Shown in pieces: positions 3,001-12,819 of a stretch of 64,000 nucleotides of DNA. Origin of the DNA: Selaginella moellendorffii (taxonomy: Eukaryota > Plantae > Lycopodiophyta); assembly GCF_000143415.4 (NCBI RefSeq), contig NW_003314325.1:460567-524566 (forward strand). The letters run 5' to 3'. A program made the translations under genes and the position numbers. Position 1 is the stretch's first letter. Every line of letters starts with the position of its first letter. The notes beneath the pieces are model-generated. The model was given only the letters and a program-made list of their open reading frames with translations. It did not search any database and was not told the DNA's origin.

Positions 3001-4885
3001 AATTGGTTCGTCGATCTCGTTGTTGTTGGATGATTGTAGCTGTTCGGCAGGTCGATGTGAGTTGTTGATGTGGAGTGCTTGACTATTGGACGATTCAGGT
3101 TGTTCGTCTTTACTGCTGCTGACTGGGTATATTGGAGTGCAACTGTAATTGGTGAAGTCGAGTTGTTGTCTCGTCGGTGCGTTGAAGTCGAAAGCGTGTT
3201 CGAAAGGTCTTGCTGATAGCGGGCTTCGATAGATGTTGGAAGCAAATGTAGGATATATTGGTGTTGTGAAGATCGGTCGGTATGGCGAAAATGGTGCTGG
3301 TCTGGTGAAGTCTGTGAAGCTGGGTGGGAAACTTGGTCGTTCGTTGTCACTATAGATGGGGTTGGTGAATGTACCTTTGAAGTGGTTGTATGCTGCTTGA
3401 AAAATGTTTTGTTGCTCGGGCGTAGTCTGTGTCGACTGCTCGAATGTTCGGTTGGGCTCGGGCACTTTGGTGGGTGCCGTCAAGGGTGCTGATTCAGGCT
3501 CGGGCACTTCGGTGGGTGCTGTCGAGGGTGCTGCCGGTGGTGTGTCCGGTGGTGTTGTGTAGTTGTCGTATTCTTTGCGGATGTCCGATACTGATTCGTC
3601 GGAGTTAGCTCGCGGTAATAATTCGTGTCGGATGTAATTCTCTCTCTTGGAGGGTCTAAGAATTTGATTCAACTTCTCTTGGTCTTTCTTTCTCTTTATT
3701 TCTAAATTCTTCAAATCTCTATCTAAACGTCGGATAAGCCGTTGTCGGTCTTCTTCCGACTTGCTGGATGTTCTTCATGGTTTTGGATACATGCATTCTT
3801 CTACTGGTTGTCGGTGTCAGATTTGTGTCTGCAGTCAATCATGCAGTTCGGGCAGAACTTTGGGAAGACTGTCGGTGGGCCAATTGTTGATAAAGTCGTC
3901 GTGAGCTTGTTCTTTCTTTTCAGTGCAAATATCGACGGTGGTGTGTGTTGGGTTGGGTTGTGGTCAGCCGAGTTGTGTTGGGTCGAGTGTGTTGGTGCAG
4001 TATGCAAACTAGTCTTCCACGTGCTGGTGCCGAGATGGAGTTCAATGAAGAGTTTCGGATATTCGGGTTTGTCTGGAATGATTTCTTCGATAATGTCGTC
4101 GAGTTGTTCGAGTCCGGATTGGGCGATGGCGTGATTGGCGAGAGTTGTTGCAGCGAACGTGTTGAGTTCGAACCGAGTTCGGACTGTTGTTTCAGTGCTG
4201 AGCTGCTGACTTTGTCGGAGGGGTTGTCGAAAAATCGGTGGTGCGTTGTGAAGTTGTCCCTCGACAAGTTGTCCAATACCGGGTAACAAAGTGATGGGTT
4301 CGTCGTTGGTGTAGGTTTTGAGGATGTGCTTCGGTATTTGGAGTGGGCGCAGGAATTGGACTTGTGTCGGAACGCTAGGATTGCTGGGTCGACGATTGCA
4401 CAGAAGATGGGTTCGTTTCGGTAGTGGTGTCGGTTTGTGTCGAGGGCGCTGGTTGATGTCTCGAACTTGGAGTGGGTGGTCTTGTGCTCGGAGATGGAGT
4501 TTGCCAATGAAGCTGCTAAGGGCATTTGCTGATGAAGGTGCTGGTAGATTGGAGTTTCTTGTCAAAGAGAGTCGTTGGTGTTCTCCGTCGGTGATTGGAC
4601 TTGGAGATCTCGAGAGAGAGCTTGCAGATTCTTCAAAAATCTCCTCTGGAAAGTTTCTGTCTTTACTGCATTGGGCAGCAACCGCTTGGACGCCGTTGAT
4701 CCATGGTGGCAGTGGCATTTGCGTGTTGAATTTGGGCGAATGTACGAATTAGGGCGTATTTTGGGCGAATTTGGGCAAGATGGGTAGATTTCTGGATCGT
4801 TCTTGCTATCTGCGCACAGAGAATGGAGAAAAAAATGGAAGAATTTGTGAACCTGAAGGGGAATTCAGAAGCCATGGTCGCCAAA
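1..4885 (-). mobile_element. Degenerate Ty3/Gypsy-type LTR retrotransposon (gag + aspartic protease; continues off the left edge)
   Basis: Minus-strand ORF pieces 2326-3714, 1807-2196, 796-1344 and 10-396 share one reading frame, split by TGA/TAA stops. They contain a retrotrans_gag-like region (YPLFHG..DAEKHVEQF..), two CCHC knuckles (CTKCKNEGHPASDC, CQICAKEGHDAKTC) and a retropepsin-like IIDGGSSVNII...ILLGRPWL segment at ~700-470. A PBS-like TGGCGACC at 4883-4876 follows a ...CA end at 4886-4887. Confidence 0.85.
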
Positions 4886-7128: not shown

Positions 7129-7274
7129 TTTCTTGCAACCCTAGAACTTGGAATCCCTTAAATAGTTTGATCCTTGCCTTTTGAAGAGAATATACTTAGA
7201 ATATGCTCAAGCGTGAAACCATTATCATTTTGGAAATTAGGGTTCTTCGCATTTTTTTCTCCTTTTTTGTGGCC

Positions 7275-8990
7275 ATGGCTCGCTGGCTGCGCAGGCTCAA
7301 TCCACTCATGTCCGCCGCGCAGTCCGAGGCGGCCTCTCCGATCCCGATCTCTCCGGCGCTGGCGGCGTTCCGAGAGCGATTGGCAAGCGATGCGCCGGAG
7401 CTTAAGGATTTCGTGAGCCAGGGCTCGGGTGTGGAAGGCTACTCGGTGGCGGTGGGGACGCGGGAGGATCCGCGGCGCAAGCCGGATTGGATGAAGCGGA
7501 TCATTCCAGGTGGGGAGAAGTACACGAGGATCAAATCGCAGCTGAGGGAGCTCAAATTGAATACCGTGTGTGAGGAGGCCAAATGCCCAAATATTGGAGA
7601 GTGCTGGAGCGGTGGCGACACGGGCACGGCCACTGCGACGATCATGATCCTGGGGGATACGTGCACCAGAGGCTGCCGGTAAGCTTTCTTCTTTCTTGCT
7701 AGTTTGTTCTTGGATGCATTGCTGGTTTGCTGGACAGTATTGGTTTTTCTTCTTGGTACTCTAGATCTTTTCTTTCTCAACATACTAGATCATTGCTCCA
7801 TTTTTTTAGATCTTTTCTTTCTCAGCATACTAGATCATTGCTCCATTGTTTCTTTCTTTGTACTCTTTCTCGACATACTAGATCTGGTTTTGTCTTGGTA
7901 CTCTCTTCTCCATTGTTTCGTTCTTGGTACTGTTCAACACATTGTTTTTTTTCTTGGTAGTTTGCTTGCTCTAACTAGATAACGTTGAGTTCTTCACCAT
8001 TGCTAGCTTTCTCTTGCGATTCCATGCTGGTTTGCTTTCTGTTTATTTTGCGTGAAGTTTCATTGTTAGTTTTTTCCATTCCTTTGTGAAGCTACTTGTA
8101 CACTTTTTTTCTTTCTCGTGTTAACATTTTTCTCGTTCCTGACGTGCAGATTTTGTGCAGTGAAGACATCGCGAGCTCCACCTCCACCTGATGCAGACGA
8201 GCCAGCCAAAGTTGCTGAAGCGATTGCCTCTTGGGACCTCGAGTATGTGGTGCTCACGAGCGTGGACCGGGATGATTTACCCGATCAAGGAAGCGGGCAC
8301 TTCGCCGAGACAGTGAGGAGGATCAAGCAACGCAAGCCGGGCATGCTGGTTGAGGCCTTAGGTGAGCTTATGCCAACATCTGGAGGAACTAACGTCGTCT
8401 TCTGTCGCAGTTCCCGACTTTCGAGGCGATCCCGACTGCGTGGAGAAAGTGGCCACCTCTGGACTGGACGTCTTTGCGCACAACATAGAAACCGTGCAAG
8501 AGCTACAGAGCTCGGTCCGAGACAGGCGAGCAAACTTCCAGCAATCCATCAACGTCTTGAAGATGGCCAAGCTGAAAGGTCCTCGCGGGGTTCTCACCAA
8601 GACCTCGATCATGCTGGGCTGTGGCGAGACATCTTCACAGGTTTTGGAGACCATGGCCAGAGTGAGAGACGCCGGCGTGGACGTGATGACTTTCGGGCAG
8701 TACATGCGACCGACGAAGAAACACATGCCAGTGTCCGAGTACGTGACTCCGGAAGCGTTCGAGAACTATCGAAGAATCGGAATGGAAATGGTACGTTTTC
8801 GAAGTTTCGAAGTGTTTTTGGTTTTTTTTTTTTTTGCCAGCTGAAGCGTGACAATCTCTTTTTCCTTTGTTTCTTACAGGGATTTCGATATGTGGCTTCT
8901 GGCCCAATGGTGAGATCCTCCTACAAAGCTGGAGAGTTCTACATCAAAGCGATGCTCGATGCAGATAGAGAGGCAGCGATGGTTTCATAG
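7275..8990 (+). CDS. LIP1: Lipoyl synthase, mitochondrial-type (radical SAM); exons 7275-7678, 8150-8361, 8411-8790, 8880-8990
   Basis: [13 protein letters not shown] (CX4CX5C), CTRGCR|FC (CX3CX2C) across intron 1, [30 protein letters not shown] and the C-terminal GPMVRSSY motif. GT-AG introns restore the frame. Arg-rich N-terminal presequence. Confidence 0.96.
7760..7885 (+). repeat. ~45-bp tandem repeat (2-3 copies) in LIP1 intron 1
   Basis: Repeated tagatcttttctttctca(a/g)catactagatcattgctccatt. Confidence 0.7.
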
Positions 8991-9234
8991 AAAAACATTA
9001 AAGGTATGATTCTTTCGCGCGGAGATTGATTCCGATTTAACACAAGCCGTCGGATTCTCCACGTCACCGATTCCCGCGGCGGAGGATCGTGCGGCCTAGC
9101 GGCGCCCCTCCAGATCCGCCGCTTGGCCTCTTCCTCTTCGAGTGTAACTCTTGGCCACTTTGGCCAAAGAGTCGAGCTCTTGAAGAGGAGGAGGAGGAAG
9201 AACTTGGGCGATCGAACAAACGAAGTAGAAGATC

Positions 9235-9666
9235 ATGGCTCGACGGAGGAAGAGCCGGAGCCGGAGCCGGGGTGGCAAGAAAATCCGCGTGCCAAAGATG
9301 AAACTCGCGGTGCGCGATGCTCTGGCGTCGCTCAAAGCCAAGAGAGGTGTCACAGCTGCGGCGGTGGCCCGGAAGATCAAGAAGAAGTATGGAAACGATC
9401 TCCCCAAGCGCTTCCAGGCCCAGGTGGGGCGATCGCTGCGCGGGCTGGTCCGAGCGGGGCGGCTGGAGCGTGTGCGCGGCCGCTTTGCGGTGGCCACTGG
9501 CAAGAGTGGACGAGGCGGGCGACGTAAAAGAGGTGGACGGTCGAGATCGAGATCGACGTCGCGGAAGGGCGGGCGGCGCCGCCGCCGCCGGGGTGGACGG
9601 CGATCGCGATCGCGGTCGCGGTCGAGGAAGGGCGGGCGGCGCCGCCGGCGTCGCAGACGCCACTAG
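9235..9666 (+). CDS. Histone H1-derived arginine-rich protamine-like (PL) protein, 143 aa, intronless
   Basis: The central segment DALASLKAKRGVTAAAVARKIKKKYGNDLPKRFQAQVGRSLRGLVRAGRLERVRGRF aligns to the H1 winged-helix (GH1) pattern. Tails are RS/GGR/poly-R rich. Manual count: ~46 Arg and ~16 Lys in 143 aa. Confidence 0.8.
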   Translation: MARRRKSRSRSRGGKKIRVPKMKLAVRDALASLKAKRGVTAAAVARKIKKKYGNDLPKRFQAQVGRSLRGLVRAGRLERVRGRFAVATGKSGRGGRRKRGGRSRSRSTSRKGGRRRRRRGGRRSRSRSRSRKGGRRRRRRRRH

Positions 9667-10559
9667 AAAATGGTGCGGGCGCATATTCCTTTGACTCGTT
9701 GGTTATTTTTGTGGTTCTTTTACGTGTTTGTGGAGGTTTTTGGTGCAGGAATCAGAGACGCATTCGATGATGAGATCCATGACAAGAACATCCTTTAATT
9801 TTTTCGAAAATGCCACTATTTGACGAATAAAATTTTGAGATTAGATCCGACCTCGAGCTTCTTCCTAATTTCTTCTTTAGCTCCTCCCACTTTTTTTTTA
9901 TCCAAGCCCGCCCCATCCGTTTGGAAGTTCCGCTCTAAATCCAGCAACGAATTCATTAGTTTTCGCCTTGCATTGCAGCAAGAAAGGGAAGCAAATCATC
10001 GGACAGTCGACATGGGCTTTTCCAGCGAAGTAGGTCGTCTCGCGAGCCGACTCTGCGCACTAGACAATTACACACAGTGTTTCGAATTAGAGTTTTCATG
10101 AAGAACTTGCAAACTTTGGACTGGGCTGGTGCTTGAAAGGAAAAAAGTAGAAAAAATGATTGTGATTTCAATGGACCTCATGTCGTCCAGTGTCTGCTGG
10201 CATTTCAGGTAATGAAAAGACGACGTTTAACTTTGAAGCAGCGAACTCTATCTACGACTATGTTCCAGCGCTTCTACTGCAGATCCCACTTCATTGCGAC
10301 CAAAGAAGTGGCAGCGTCCAAGGACTGGTATCCAGGGATGAGTTCACAAGCACGGAAAGACTTGAAATTGTAACCACCATTTGAAGAACCCATCATCTGG
10401 TAAGAAGCTGCAAGGATGATCCCTCTGCGACTAAGGCGTCTGCTGTGGTTAAATTGGAGTTTCGAACGTCCAAGGAGAGTACTGGTAGTCTACACCAGAT
10501 CCGATCTGGCTCATTTGGTTCGTATGAATACTGGACGGCGTGCTTGAATGACGTCTCTG

Positions 10560-11700
10560 GGTACATTCTGGAAAACGAGGCTTATTACATTGATTCAAGG
10601 AAATTTTGACCTAGTTAAAGAAAATTAGAGGGATTGTAGAATTATAAATTTTTATTAGAGATTATTATTTAAAATAAAATGTATTTTTTATAATAGTAAG
10701 ATAGAATTGGCTGAAGTAAGAACAGTATAAAAAATAGTTGTGTGTATACAGAATTTTATAATAACTGCAAGCAAGGTGATTTAAGTTTTTATGGAAGTAA
10801 AATTGCATTTTATGGTATATTTGGTAGTAAATACAAAAATATTTTTCTGTTATATAGTTTTTTTGGGGTTTAAAATCTAAATGTAATATAATAAGAATAC
10901 AGTCAATTTAAACTATTAAAACTCACTATATAGTATTCAGAAATATTACTTGATAGGCTGATATAACATTTGAAATTTTGCCTAATTTTCAAACATTTCA
11001 GAGTGATTTTTTCTAAATGTAATGTTCTATTTATTCTTTTATAATTATATATAAATATATTCTTAAACAGCTCAGTTCTATGCAAGTTGATGAGATCCCT
11101 TAAAATATTAACTATCCAATTAATAGGAAGCTAGAACTTCTTACATCTTAAGAATTTAATGAACCATTGTACTTTCTAAGATTTCCTCACCAATCAAATT
11201 AATCTAATGCTTTGTGATCCTTTTTATAAAGTCATTTTCTTTGTAATAATCAAATGTGCATATTTATTATCAAAATATATTGAACAATAACCAGCTGTTT
11301 CTTGATTAAAATGTAAAACTTACGTATCTTTTTGTTATGTGTGTGTACTTTATTACTTCATATTAAAGCATCTATTTAATTCTATGTAGGCCAGAATAGA
11401 CGGATTCTTTGTTAGTCTCTATATATAACTTAAATAACAAAAGCACATTTTAAATATATACTCTGAATATCTATTAATATTGCTGCACGGATTCTTTTGT
11501 ACTCTTTCTCTTTCTCCAGCTTCCCTCCACTTGCTCGGCTTGTTTGTTCAGGGAGCATTTCCTCCCTTCTCATCTCTCTTTTGCTGAATTGGAGAGTTCT
11601 TATGGGACAAATCCTGACCCTTATCTTACTTAAGAATATGCGTGGTATAAAGGTTAGCGTTTGAGGGTTGCATCAGTGAGATCGATTCGATTGATTCTCC
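10560..11700 (+). repeat. AT-rich spacer of the amplified module (copy 1)
   Basis: Colinear with 16850-17740 and 19020-19380, and inverted at 27180-29510. Confidence 0.8.
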
Positions 11701-11939: not shown

Positions 11940-12819
11940 ATGAAGGCTTACGACGGCAGCAGTAGCAACGGGCAGCACAAGAAGGCCTACGGCGGCAGCA
12001 GCAACGGGCAACACAATGTGTTCACAAAGGAAAAGCCCAAGGAGGTGGACATTTTTGCAATCGAGAACCCTGCTGAACGCAGGCGAGCAAGGTAAGCAAG
12101 ACTGAGTTTGATCTTTACTTGCTTTTGTTTGTAACAGGTACGAGATCATAGGAACTCATCGTCCGGGTGAGGAGGAGGGCTTACTCGTCGACCAATGCAG
12201 AAGATGTAAGCAGAGAGGCCATTGGGAAAGACACTGCAAGGGGGTAAGAAAGCTCAATTATTTCCCAGATTTGACTTTTTGTTTCTTCTTTTAGCCTGGA
12301 GTGGATCCTTTTGCTCATGAACAAAAGAAATGCTACCTCTGCCTAGTGAAGGGACACGATACTTATCAATGTTCAAGAGATCCCCTGCGAAATGAGGACT
12401 GGGCAGAGAGGACTTACACTGGACCAATGAAGAGACTTCGTCTTCAGGTTTGTATCAGTTTCTATTCTCTGTTTCTTTGTATGTTTATTTGTGTACGTTT
12501 TCAGGTGGGTTATATCGTTCAGGTAGCAGACTTCCCGCAATACCATCCTCGTTTCTGCGTCCAACGGATTGAATACGAAAACCTCAAACGGATCTGCAAA
12601 AAACATCCAGACTTGGGAATCATGGTTGTGCCTGAGCCACCCTGTCCTCTTGCGGCCCTTATCTGGGAATATTTTCAGCGACTGGATGAAGTTTTATACG
12701 AAGCAGGCCTAGGCTTCGAGTTTTACAGATCCGATGAAGAAGTGCCTCCAGGGTATGACCGGTATGCGGCTGCAGAAGAAGCATATATTGAAGAATTGAA
12801 AAATGAAGCGAAGCATTGA
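11940..12819 (+). CDS. Repeat + double CCHC zinc-knuckle protein, 4 exons (copy 1)
   Basis: Exon 1 MKAYDGSSSNGQHKKAYGGSSNGQH...; exon 2 CRRCKQRGHWERHC; exon 3 CYLCLVKGHDTYQC; exon 4 VGYIVQVADFPQYHPRFC...EAKH*. All introns are GT-AG and in phase. Confidence 0.75.

What the first reader, a model, noticed from the sequence alone, without database searches (positions are those of the whole stretch)
9235..9666. H1-derived, arginine-rich protamine-like gene: candidate sperm chromatin protein of a flagellate-sperm land plant
Seen: an intronless 143-aa ORF with a recognisable H1 globular domain whose tails are Arg-rich rather than Lys/Ala/Pro-rich (~32% Arg by manual count). It has N- and C-terminal RS dipeptide runs and poly-R tracts. 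Established: Lys-to-Arg shifted H1s with RS repeats define the protamine-like (PL) sperm nuclear basic proteins of bivalves and tunicates, and liverwort (Marchantia) protamines are cleaved from male-germline H1 variants. Inference: this is a lycophyte-type PL protein, possibly processed into protamine peptides, with RS repeats as SRPK phosphorylation sites. It could be an intermediate in the H1-to-protamine transition in vascular plants.
Basis: partly seen in the sequence, partly recalled or inferred. Interest (0 to 1): 0.85.

Follow-up and report, generated by a model that had tools for sequence, protein, structure and literature searches.

The report
Arginine-rich H1-like gene in Selaginella
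A spikemoss (Selaginella moellendorffii) gene encodes a linker-histone H1 fold flanked by protamine-like arginine/serine tails that the public gene models splice away, making it a credible but still unproven candidate for the first sperm-chromatin "protamine-like" gene of a vascular plant.

Summary
Window 9235-9666 (+) is an uninterrupted 143-aa ORF with 32.2% Arg. It has a genuine H1 globular domain: Pfam PF00538 scores 35.5 bits against a cut-off of 22.4, the AF2 model is a winged helix, and the best PDB fold matches are H1/H5. It also has RS runs and poly-R tracts.

The genome is Selaginella moellendorffii. The locus is annotated as SELMODRAFT_423943/424901, "H15 domain-containing". Both 112-aa models remove 9524-9748 as an intron, and with it the whole Arg-rich tail. 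No tail-bearing protein exists in the 15-billion-sequence collection.

Internal evidence favours a translated tail:
- It consists of two tandem modules that differ by 6 synonymous and 1 non-synonymous codons in the ORF frame only (P about 0.0008).
- The same SRSRSRGG motif is encoded with different Ser codons at the two ends of the protein.
- The "intron" is 75% GC over the tail.

The nearest relative is an intronless, half-Arg-shifted Selaginella H1-like paralog. No orthologue was found elsewhere.

A histone-type S-phase promoter cluster lies upstream, and 16 transcriptome-sized runs hold the locus, so non-germline expression stays open. Verdict: a real, mis-modelled, protamine-like H1 gene whose sperm role is plausible but unproven.

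The parts
9047..9159 (+). Putative histone-type promoter cluster. It contains a CG element CCGTCG (9047), a type I-like Hex/reverse-Oct element CCACGTCACCGATTCCCG (9059-9076), GGAGGATC (9081), a reverse Oct-like GATCCGCC (9113) and GCCACT (9154).
   Evidence: The type I consensus with up to 3 mismatches matches once in 64 kb, where 0.03 is expected. The consensus and motif definitions come from PMC3603003. Four of six histone promoter motifs are present, each expected 0.06-0.15 times per 244 nt. The cluster is identical in the other haplotype. Function is inferred, not shown.
9235..9666 (+). Complete 143-aa ORF (stop at 9664-9666) encoding the Arg-rich H1-like protein.
   Evidence: The start context is A at -3 and G at +4 (read from the sequence).
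9235..9291 (+). N-terminal basic tail, residues 1-19 (MARRRKSRSRSRGGKKIRV).
   Evidence: Ser is encoded by AGC here.
9292..9510 (+). GH1 (H15) winged-helix globular domain, residues 20-92.
   Evidence: Pfam PF00538, 35.5 bits. AF2 topology is H22-33, H41-52, H60-73, E77-80, E83-86 with pLDDT 79-91. The top 13 Foldseek PDB hits are H1/H5 globular domains; 5nl0_Z has TM 0.80 and rmsd 1.6 A.
9511..9663 (+). C-terminal protamine-like tail, residues 93-143: 55% Arg, 6.3 kDa. It holds two tandem modules, 9532-9591 (GGRSRSRSTSRKGGRRRRRR) and 9592-9663 (GGRRSRSRSRSRKGGRRRRRRRRH).
   Evidence: The modules differ by 6 synonymous and 1 non-synonymous codons in this frame only.
9524..9748 (+). The 225-nt 'intron' of the public 112-aa models (GAC|GTAAAA ... 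GTGCAG|GA). It removes the tail and the ORF's stop codon.
   Evidence: Joining 9523 to 9749 reproduces P0006/P0001. GC is 75% over 9524-9666 and 43% over 9667-9748.
9749..9798 (+). Second exon of the public models (…IRDAFDDEIHDKNIL, stop). If the tail is translated, this stretch is 3' UTR.
9826..9831 (+). AATAAA polyadenylation-signal-like hexamer, 160 nt after the ORF's stop.

Best explanation
This is a lineage-specific, intronless Selaginella moellendorffii linker-histone derivative of the protamine-like (PL) type. A divergent but intact GH1 winged helix is flanked by a short RS-rich N-tail and a 51-residue, 55%-Arg C-tail built from two GG-RS(n)-K-GG-R(n) modules.

Proposed mechanism, which is inferred. 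The winged helix docks on nucleosomal or linker DNA. The Arg tails neutralise phosphates and bridge DNA much more tightly than Lys/Ala/Pro tails would, driving strong chromatin compaction. Ser in the RS runs gives a phosphorylation switch for deposition and removal. The tail may be released as a roughly 6-kDa protamine-like peptide. The most likely site of action is the spermatogenous cells or spermatids of the male gametophyte.

What is shown: the ORF, the fold, the composition, the frame-specific conservation of the tail, and the mis-modelling in the public annotation. What is inferred: DNA condensation, phosphorylation, cleavage and germline specificity.
For: - The GH1 domain is supported by HMM, by the AF2 model and by fold matches to H1/H5 in chromatosome structures. 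A profile that includes this protein hits H5/H1.0 at 1e-11 to 1e-13.
- Overall composition is 32% Arg with R/(R+K) = 0.74, and 0.90 in the C-tail.
- Arg replaces Lys at 5 conserved GH1 positions. GH1 holds 11 Arg, against 1-3 in canonical plant H1 and 7 in the Selaginella paralog.
- The tail looks coding. The two modules differ by 6 synonymous and 1 non-synonymous codons in the ORF frame, while the other five frames are mostly non-synonymous; P is about 0.0008.
- The same SRSRSR-GG motif uses AGC-Ser in the undisputed N-terminal exon and TCG-Ser in the tail.
- Both haplotypes keep the ORF open, and they differ by an in-frame 15-nt indel.
- The 'intron' is 75% GC over the tail.
- The closest paralog (P0007) carries a contiguous single-exon basic RS tail in the RefSeq model, whereas the JGI models of it are truncated.
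- Runs holding at least 0.85-0.94 of the sampled words of 9050-9900 must contain the 'intron' sequence.
- The nearest ESM-Atlas clusters are mollusc H15 proteins (0.91) and arthropod 'protamine-like' proteins (0.88).
- Literature: H1-derived PL proteins and protamines occur in animals and in Marchantia, and protamines have been detected biochemically in fern sperm.
Against:
- The upstream motif cluster resembles the S-phase/meristem element of ordinary replication-dependent plant histone genes.
- The locus is present in contigs of about 16 transcriptome-sized runs from several studies, which is not what a strictly sperm-limited transcript would predict. However, tissues are unknown and the run type is only a guess.
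- No orthologue with an Arg tail was found in any other species, and no specific link to Marchantia precursors emerged.
- Six conserved basic GH1 positions are lost.
- The annotated acceptor (T-rich tract followed by GCAG|G) is a plausible splice site, so a tail-less isoform may exist.
Confidence: 0.45

Rival explanations
1. It is a proliferation-coupled (S-phase) or otherwise non-germline Arg-rich linker-histone variant. The tail-bearing protein is made, but in dividing sporophyte cells or a stress/heterochromatin context, not specifically in sperm.
For: A histone-type promoter cluster (CG element, Hex, Oct-like, GCCACT) lies 80-190 nt upstream of the ATG and is conserved in both haplotypes. 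The locus is held by many probably-RNA runs from about 5-7 studies. The paralog that RefSeq simply calls 'histone H1' is also half Arg-shifted, so Selaginella H1s may be Arg-rich in general.
Against: An Arg content of 55% in the tail, with RS runs, is otherwise characteristic of sperm nuclear basic proteins (established knowledge). Spermatogenous cells also divide rapidly, so an S-phase element does not exclude the germline. The Oct-like parts are degenerate (2-nt insertion, 1 mismatch). No RefSeq protein model for this locus is found in the collection, although its paralog has one. That hints at low expression in the commonly sampled tissues.
Confidence: 0.25
2. The public 112-aa model is right. 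9524-9748 is a true intron, the product is a small GH1-only protein with an acidic C-terminus, and the Arg-rich 'tail' is untranslated GC-rich triplet-repeat sequence.
For: GT...AG boundaries with a T-rich tract before GCAG|G. Both haplotype models in GenBank and UniProt use this structure. Some runs hold only 0.70-0.72 of the words, a deficit the size of the intron. GC-rich repeats are open in several frames.
Against: The synonymous pattern between the two tail modules is specific to the ORF frame. The same peptide motif is encoded with different codons in exon 1. The donor has C at -1, and the first 143 nt of the 'intron' are 75% GC, richer than the flanking exon; by my own knowledge this is unlike the short, AU-rich introns typical of plants. 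JGI models of the paralog are demonstrably truncated at the low-complexity tail. Runs with shares of 0.85-0.94 contain the 'intron'. An H1 domain with no basic C-tail would be atypical.
Confidence: 0.12
3. It is a young orphan or decaying H1 paralog, or a winged-helix RS-domain protein acting on RNA or in the nucleolus, with no role in chromatin compaction.
For: No orthologue outside S. moellendorffii was found in 1.84 and 5.8 billion-sequence searches. Six conserved basic GH1 residues are lost. RS and RGG-like tracts also occur in RNA-binding proteins (established knowledge).
Against: The ORF is intact in both haplotypes, with 1 substitution in 432 nt against about 1% in the flanks. The GH1 model is confident. 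Fast evolution and orphan status are typical of sperm nuclear basic proteins. Gene callers visibly mis-handle such tails, so absence from protein databases is weak evidence.
Confidence: 0.1

Closest known systems
Marchantia polymorpha male-germline H1 precursors of protamines (D'Ippolito et al. 2019, J Biol Chem 294:16364; cited)
   Same: It is a plant with flagellate sperm. The architecture is an H1 globular domain followed by an Arg-rich C-terminal region of protamine size.
   Different: No sequence-level kinship was detected: no Marchantia protein was among the hits with E<=1e-3, and the nearest relatives are a Selaginella paralog and ordinary plant H1s. [quoted passage not shown] The Marchantia sequences could not be fetched for a tree.
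Protamine-like (PL-I type) sperm nuclear basic proteins of bivalves, tunicates, annelids and spiders
   Same: A winged-helix H1/H5-type core with Arg-shifted basic tails and R+K of about 43%. The ESM-Atlas nearest clusters are mollusc H15 proteins (0.91) and arthropod 'protamine-like' proteins (0.88).
   Different: Independent origin within plant H1. The protein is much smaller than most PL-I proteins. Its presence in sperm has not been shown.
Selaginella moellendorffii 'histone H1 / H1-like' XP_024539071.1 and XP_002970417.2 (P0007, P0011)
   Same: The closest relative: 37% identity over GH1, E = 2e-13. It is also intronless, lineage-specific, and has RS/SK repeats in its C-tail.
   Different: The paralog is 238 aa with mixed Lys/Arg (R 17%, K 16%), a Q-rich N-terminus and no poly-R tracts. 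The present gene is far more extreme, and its tail is missing from every database model.
Canonical plant linker histones H1 (e.g. the Lupinus and Miscanthus hits P0003, P0004)
   Same: The GH1 domain is about 30% identical. The structure is tripartite. The promoter has a histone-type motif cluster.
   Different: Canonical tails are Lys/Ala/Pro-rich, with R/(R+K) of 0.05-0.19 against 0.74 here. Five conserved Lys are replaced by Arg and six basic positions are lost in GH1.

Membership tests
Linker histone H1/H5 family (Pfam PF00538) | GH1 winged-helix globular domain recognisable by HMM | tested here: met
   35.5 bits against a gathering score of 22.4, E = 1.2e-08, residues 20-92.
Linker histone H1/H5 family (Pfam PF00538) | Three-helix plus beta-hairpin fold superposable on solved GH1/GH5 | tested here: met
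   AF2 topology H-H-H-E-E with pLDDT 79-91. The top Foldseek hits are H1/H5 in chromatosomes, with target TM 0.73-0.80 and rmsd 1.6-2.3 A. The MSA was shallow (7 rows).
Linker histone H1/H5 family (Pfam PF00538) | Lys/Ala/Pro-rich C-terminal tail with S/TPKK-type motifs | tested here: not met
   The tail has 28 R, 10 G, 8 S and 3 K, with no Ala, no Pro and no SPKK.
Protamine-like (PL) sperm nuclear basic proteins | H1-related winged-helix core with Arg-enriched basic composition intermediate between H1 and protamine | tested here: met
   R 32% plus K 11%; R/(R+K) = 0.74.
Protamine-like (PL) sperm nuclear basic proteins | Expressed in the male germline and present in mature sperm chromatin | not tested
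Tissue metadata of the holding runs are coded or absent. The gene is not in the held part of the atlas supplements.
Marchantia-type H1-derived protamine precursors | Post-translational cleavage releasing Arg-rich peptides, with a C-terminal modification | not testable with these tools
   This needs top-down mass spectrometry of sperm basic proteins.
Marchantia-type H1-derived protamine precursors | Common descent (orthology) with the liverwort genes | tested here: inconclusive
   An exhaustive phmmer search of residues 1-97 gave only the protein's own allele cluster, a Selaginella paralog, two angiosperm H1s and one unnamed protein. The Marchantia sequences could not be obtained for a tree.
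True protamines (P type) | Small protein with Arg of roughly 50% or more | tested here: not met
   The whole protein is 143 aa with 32% Arg. Only the 51-aa tail (55% Arg, 6.3 kDa) would qualify, and only if it is cleaved.
Replication-dependent plant histone genes (promoter class) | Oct-containing composite element (type I: CCACGTCANCGATCCGCG) in the proximal promoter | tested here: inconclusive
   A near match sits at 9059-9076. The tool counts 2 mismatches; read by eye it is the consensus with a 2-nt insertion in the Oct half. It is unique in the window, where 0.03 matches are expected. CCGTCG, GATCCGCC and GCCACT are also present. The consensus comes from PMC3603003. Activity was not tested.

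The most novel reading that the evidence does not exclude
This is the first protamine-precursor gene of a vascular plant. It would be a Selaginella-specific, independently evolved H1-to-protamine transition, with the half-shifted paralog XP_024539071.1 as a surviving intermediate. It has been hidden from every database because gene models splice out the tail. A further possibility is that the 9524-9748 splice is real but regulated, so that one gene yields a tail-less GH1 protein in somatic cells and a protamine-tailed form in spermatids.
Probability: 0.35. Interest if true: 0.75.

Novelty: new member of a known kind. Interest (0 to 1): 0.55.

Why it matters
Protamines were detected biochemically in fern, liverwort and Chara sperm decades ago. 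The only plant genes tied to them are the Marchantia H1 precursors. I found no paper linking Selaginella, or this locus, to protamines.

A lycophyte PL gene would show that the H1-to-protamine route was taken again, or retained, in vascular plants with swimming sperm. It would also give a concrete molecular handle on sperm chromatin compaction in that lineage.

There is a practical lesson as well. Automated models deleted the defining tail, here and in the paralog, so homology surveys of plant SNBPs based on protein databases will miss such genes.

Tried and rejected
L003, fetched later, covers that stretch and was not used further.
- Exact look-ups of the 143-aa and 148-aa proteins, and of the long antisense ORFs, in assembled public contigs found nothing. 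This route therefore says nothing about transcripts.
- Word-indexed homology searches with the whole protein, with the GH1 region and with the paralog returned only Selaginella alleles.
- phmmer of the whole protein against PDB sequences gave only a spurious hit. A profile was needed to reach H1/H5.
- The ESM-Atlas search with the tail alone gave no usable hit.
- The expression-atlas and comparative-transcriptome supplements held as text do not contain Smo424901 or Smo423943. The D'Ippolito 2019 paper is not held.
- There is no paralog or other Arg-rich ORF of this kind elsewhere in the window.
- Divergence between haplotypes is too low (about 1%) to test constraint on the tail alone.
- Rejected: the antisense 206-aa ORF as the gene, because it has no domain support and the GH1 hit is on the + strand.

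Full report
**1. The observation**

Window 9235-9666 (+) is an ATG-to-TAG ORF of 143 codons with no internal stop. It encodes 46 Arg (32.2%), 20 Gly, 16 Lys, 14 Ser and 13 Ala. Net charge is about +59 and mass is 16.4 kDa. RS runs lie at residues 7-12, 102-107 and 122-131, and poly-R tracts at 114-119 and 135-142. The ORF is 69% GC in a 44% GC window.

**2. The H1 domain is real**

- Pfam Linker_histone (PF00538) matches residues 20-92 at 35.5 bits (gathering score 22.4, E = 1.2e-08), and no other family matches.
- An AF2 model from a 7-row alignment gives the GH1 topology H22-33, H41-52, H60-73, E77-80, E83-86 with block pLDDT 79-91. Both tails are disordered.
- Foldseek against the PDB ranks linker-histone globular domains in chromatosomes first through thirteenth. 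For 5nl0_Z the target TM is 0.80 and rmsd is 1.6 A over 74 columns. E-values are weak (8e-3 at best) because half of the query is disordered.
- A profile of the alignment hits H5 and H1.0 at 1e-11 to 1e-13.

**3. Organism and annotation**

The only close database match is SELMODRAFT_424901 of Selaginella moellendorffii. The window's own allele is SELMODRAFT_423943. Both are 112-aa "H15 domain-containing" hypothetical proteins.

These models are identical to the ORF for 97 residues and then continue with IRDAFDDEIHDK/TNIL. This corresponds to splicing 9523 to 9749, which removes a 225-nt intron (GAC|GTAAAA ... GTGCAG|GA). That splice deletes the entire Arg-rich tail.

Neither the 143-aa sequence nor the 148-aa sequence of the other haplotype is in the 15-billion-protein collection. 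No RefSeq XP_ accession is attached to either allele cluster, whereas the paralog has one.

**4. Is the tail translated?** Direct RNA evidence could not be obtained (section 7). The internal evidence favours translation.

- (a) The tail is two tandem modules, residues 100-119 and 120-143. Aligned at the DNA level they differ at 9 nucleotides in 7 codons. In the ORF frame, 6 of the 7 codon differences are synonymous (AGA/CGA, AGA/CGG, CGG/AGG, CGC/CGG, CGC/CGT, CGG/CGC). In the other five frames the synonymous/non-synonymous counts are 4/4, 0/7, 2/5, 3/4 and 1/7. Random substitutions give one or fewer non-synonymous codons in 0.08% of trials. The module alignment was made by hand with one 3-nt gap.
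- (b) The motif SRSRSR-GG in the undisputed N-terminal exon uses AGC for Ser, while the tail uses TCG throughout. The motif therefore recurs at the peptide level, not as a copied DNA repeat.
- (c) The other haplotype differs in the tail only by an in-frame 15-nt insertion (5 more Arg) and keeps the same stop. This is weak evidence, because triplet slippage is in-frame anyway.
- (d) The first 143 nt of the "intron" are 75% GC, richer than exon 1 at 66%. Only the last 82 nt (43% GC) look non-coding, and they sit where a 3' UTR would be. An AATAAA lies at 9826.
- (e) The nearest paralog is a single exon whose RefSeq model includes a long basic RS-containing tail. The JGI models of that gene stop at 70 and 149 aa ("partial"). 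The same pipeline therefore truncated low-complexity tails elsewhere.
- (f) Runs holding 0.85-0.94 of the sampled 31-mers of 9050-9900 must contain the 225-nt stretch, which is 27% of the query.

Against this, the acceptor is a good one (T-rich tract, GCAG|G), and five runs hold only 0.70-0.72 of the words. A spliced isoform may therefore exist. I put the probability that a tail-bearing protein is made at about 0.8.

**5. Relatives**

An exhaustive phmmer search of residues 1-97 against 1.84 billion representatives gave five proteins at E<=1e-3:
- the protein's own allele cluster;
- a Selaginella paralog (XP_024539071.1, "histone H1-like", 36% identity);
- Lupinus and Miscanthus H1s (31% each);
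- one unnamed 121-aa H1-like protein.

BLASTP against the paralog gives 37% identity over GH1, E = 2e-13. The paralog is itself intronless and found only in Selaginella. It is half-shifted: R 17%, K 16%, S 13%, R/(R+K) = 0.51, with RSRSR and SRSKSRSKSR tracts. Canonical plant H1s in the set have R/(R+K) of 0.05-0.19, and this gene has 0.74.

The Lys-to-Arg shift also reaches the globular domain. Arg sits at five positions where canonical H1s have Lys (46, 69, 76, 79, 81). GH1 holds 11 Arg here, 7 in the paralog and 1-3 in canonical H1. Six conserved basic positions are lost. So the gene derives from plant H1, probably within the Selaginella lineage.

No tie to the Marchantia precursors could be shown, and their sequences could not be fetched. 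By language-model features the nearest clusters are mollusc H15 proteins (0.91) and arthropod "protamine-like" proteins (0.88). I read this as convergence in kind, not kinship.

**6. An unexpected promoter**

The region 80-190 nt upstream of the ATG carries several motifs:
- CCGTCG at 9047;
- CCACGTCACCGATTCCCG at 9059-9076;
- GGAGGATC at 9081;
- GATCCGCC at 9113;
- GCCACT at 9154.

The second is a near match to the type I Oct-containing composite element of plant histone genes, CCACGTCANCGATCCGCG (Hex plus reverse Oct). That element confers S-phase and meristem expression. The others are the CG element, Oct-like octamers and the reverse-CAT-like motif described for plant histone promoters (PMC3603003).

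The type I pattern with up to 3 mismatches occurs once in the 64-kb window, where 0.03 matches are expected. Each of the four motif types is expected 0.06-0.15 times in 244 nt. The cluster is identical in the other haplotype, although three SNPs lie just upstream of it. The paralog's 175-nt upstream region has none of these except one degenerate Oct.

This supports a bona fide histone-family gene. It also suggests replication-coupled transcription, which fits rapidly dividing spermatogenous cells but equally fits any meristem.

**7. Expression**

The look-up of sequencing runs listed 20 runs that hold the stretch. Sixteen of them were guessed to be RNA (contig sets of 12-60 Mb). They come from about 7 studies, and none is on record as RNA.

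I did not send those places to any search tool afterwards.

Exact-product look-ups in assembled contigs found nothing for any ORF of the locus. The held parts of two expression supplements lack the gene. The would-refute criterion of the finding, vegetative versus sperm expression, therefore remains untested.

**8. Mechanism and verdict**

The best reading (0.45) is a PL-type, H1-derived chromatin condenser. The winged helix provides nucleosome or linker-DNA docking. The Arg tails provide charge neutralisation and DNA bridging. The RS runs are likely phospho-switches. The 6.3-kDa, 55%-Arg tail may be released as in Marchantia and many animals. It most likely acts in the male germline.

The rivals are:
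- a proliferation-coupled, non-germline Arg-rich H1 variant (0.25);
- the spliced 112-aa product as the true gene (0.12);
- an orphan or RNA-related protein (0.10).

**9. Novelty**

H1-derived PL proteins and protamines are a known kind. I found no paper linking Selaginella or this locus to protamines, and the tail-bearing protein is absent from the databases searched. I rate it a new member of a known kind. Interest is moderate now, and would be high if sperm localisation is shown.

Noticed in passing
window 9047-9159: A cluster of plant histone-promoter motifs lies upstream of the ORF: CG element, Hex, type I-like Hex/Oct composite, Oct-like octamers and GCCACT. It is conserved in both haplotypes and suggests S-phase-type regulation.
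   Followed up: partly
L002 3001-3717 (GL377602.1; protein P0007 = XP_024539071.1; allele P0011 = XP_002970417.2): A second intronless, Selaginella-only H1-like gene has a mixed Arg/Lys/Ser tail (R 17%, K 16%, S 13%) with RS and SK repeats. It could be an intermediate PL-like form or partner. Its JGI models are truncated to 70 and 149 aa.
   Followed up: partly
window 9551-9565 region versus L001 (GL377635.1) about 4317-4331: The two haplotypes differ by a 15-nt in-frame CGC-repeat indel, giving 6 or 11 consecutive Arg. This is a length polymorphism of the first poly-R tract.
   Followed up: yes
window about 9677-9690 and L002 about 2827-2840: The 14-nt string GGCGCATATTCCTT occurs just 3' of this ORF's stop and also in the 5' flank of the paralog. 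It could be chance or a shared element.
   Followed up: no
window about 7270-8990 (+): A multi-exon lipoyl synthase gene (LIAS_N plus Radical_SAM, 368 aa in the public record) ends 245 nt before the H1-like ATG. The intergenic space is very tight.
   Followed up: no
L003 (GL377629.1 468301-471864), window about 7735-11298: The public record carries a 265-aa model (faint zf-CCHC) whose span covers both the lipoyl synthase and the H1-like gene. It is probably a chimeric model joined to the CCHC-knuckle ORF at window 12301-12819.
   Followed up: no
window 10500-11500: An AT-rich stretch (22-30% GC) lies downstream of the gene. Its nature was not examined.
   Followed up: no
It lies in the neighbouring lipoyl synthase gene, outside the finding, and was left alone afterwards.
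   Followed up: no
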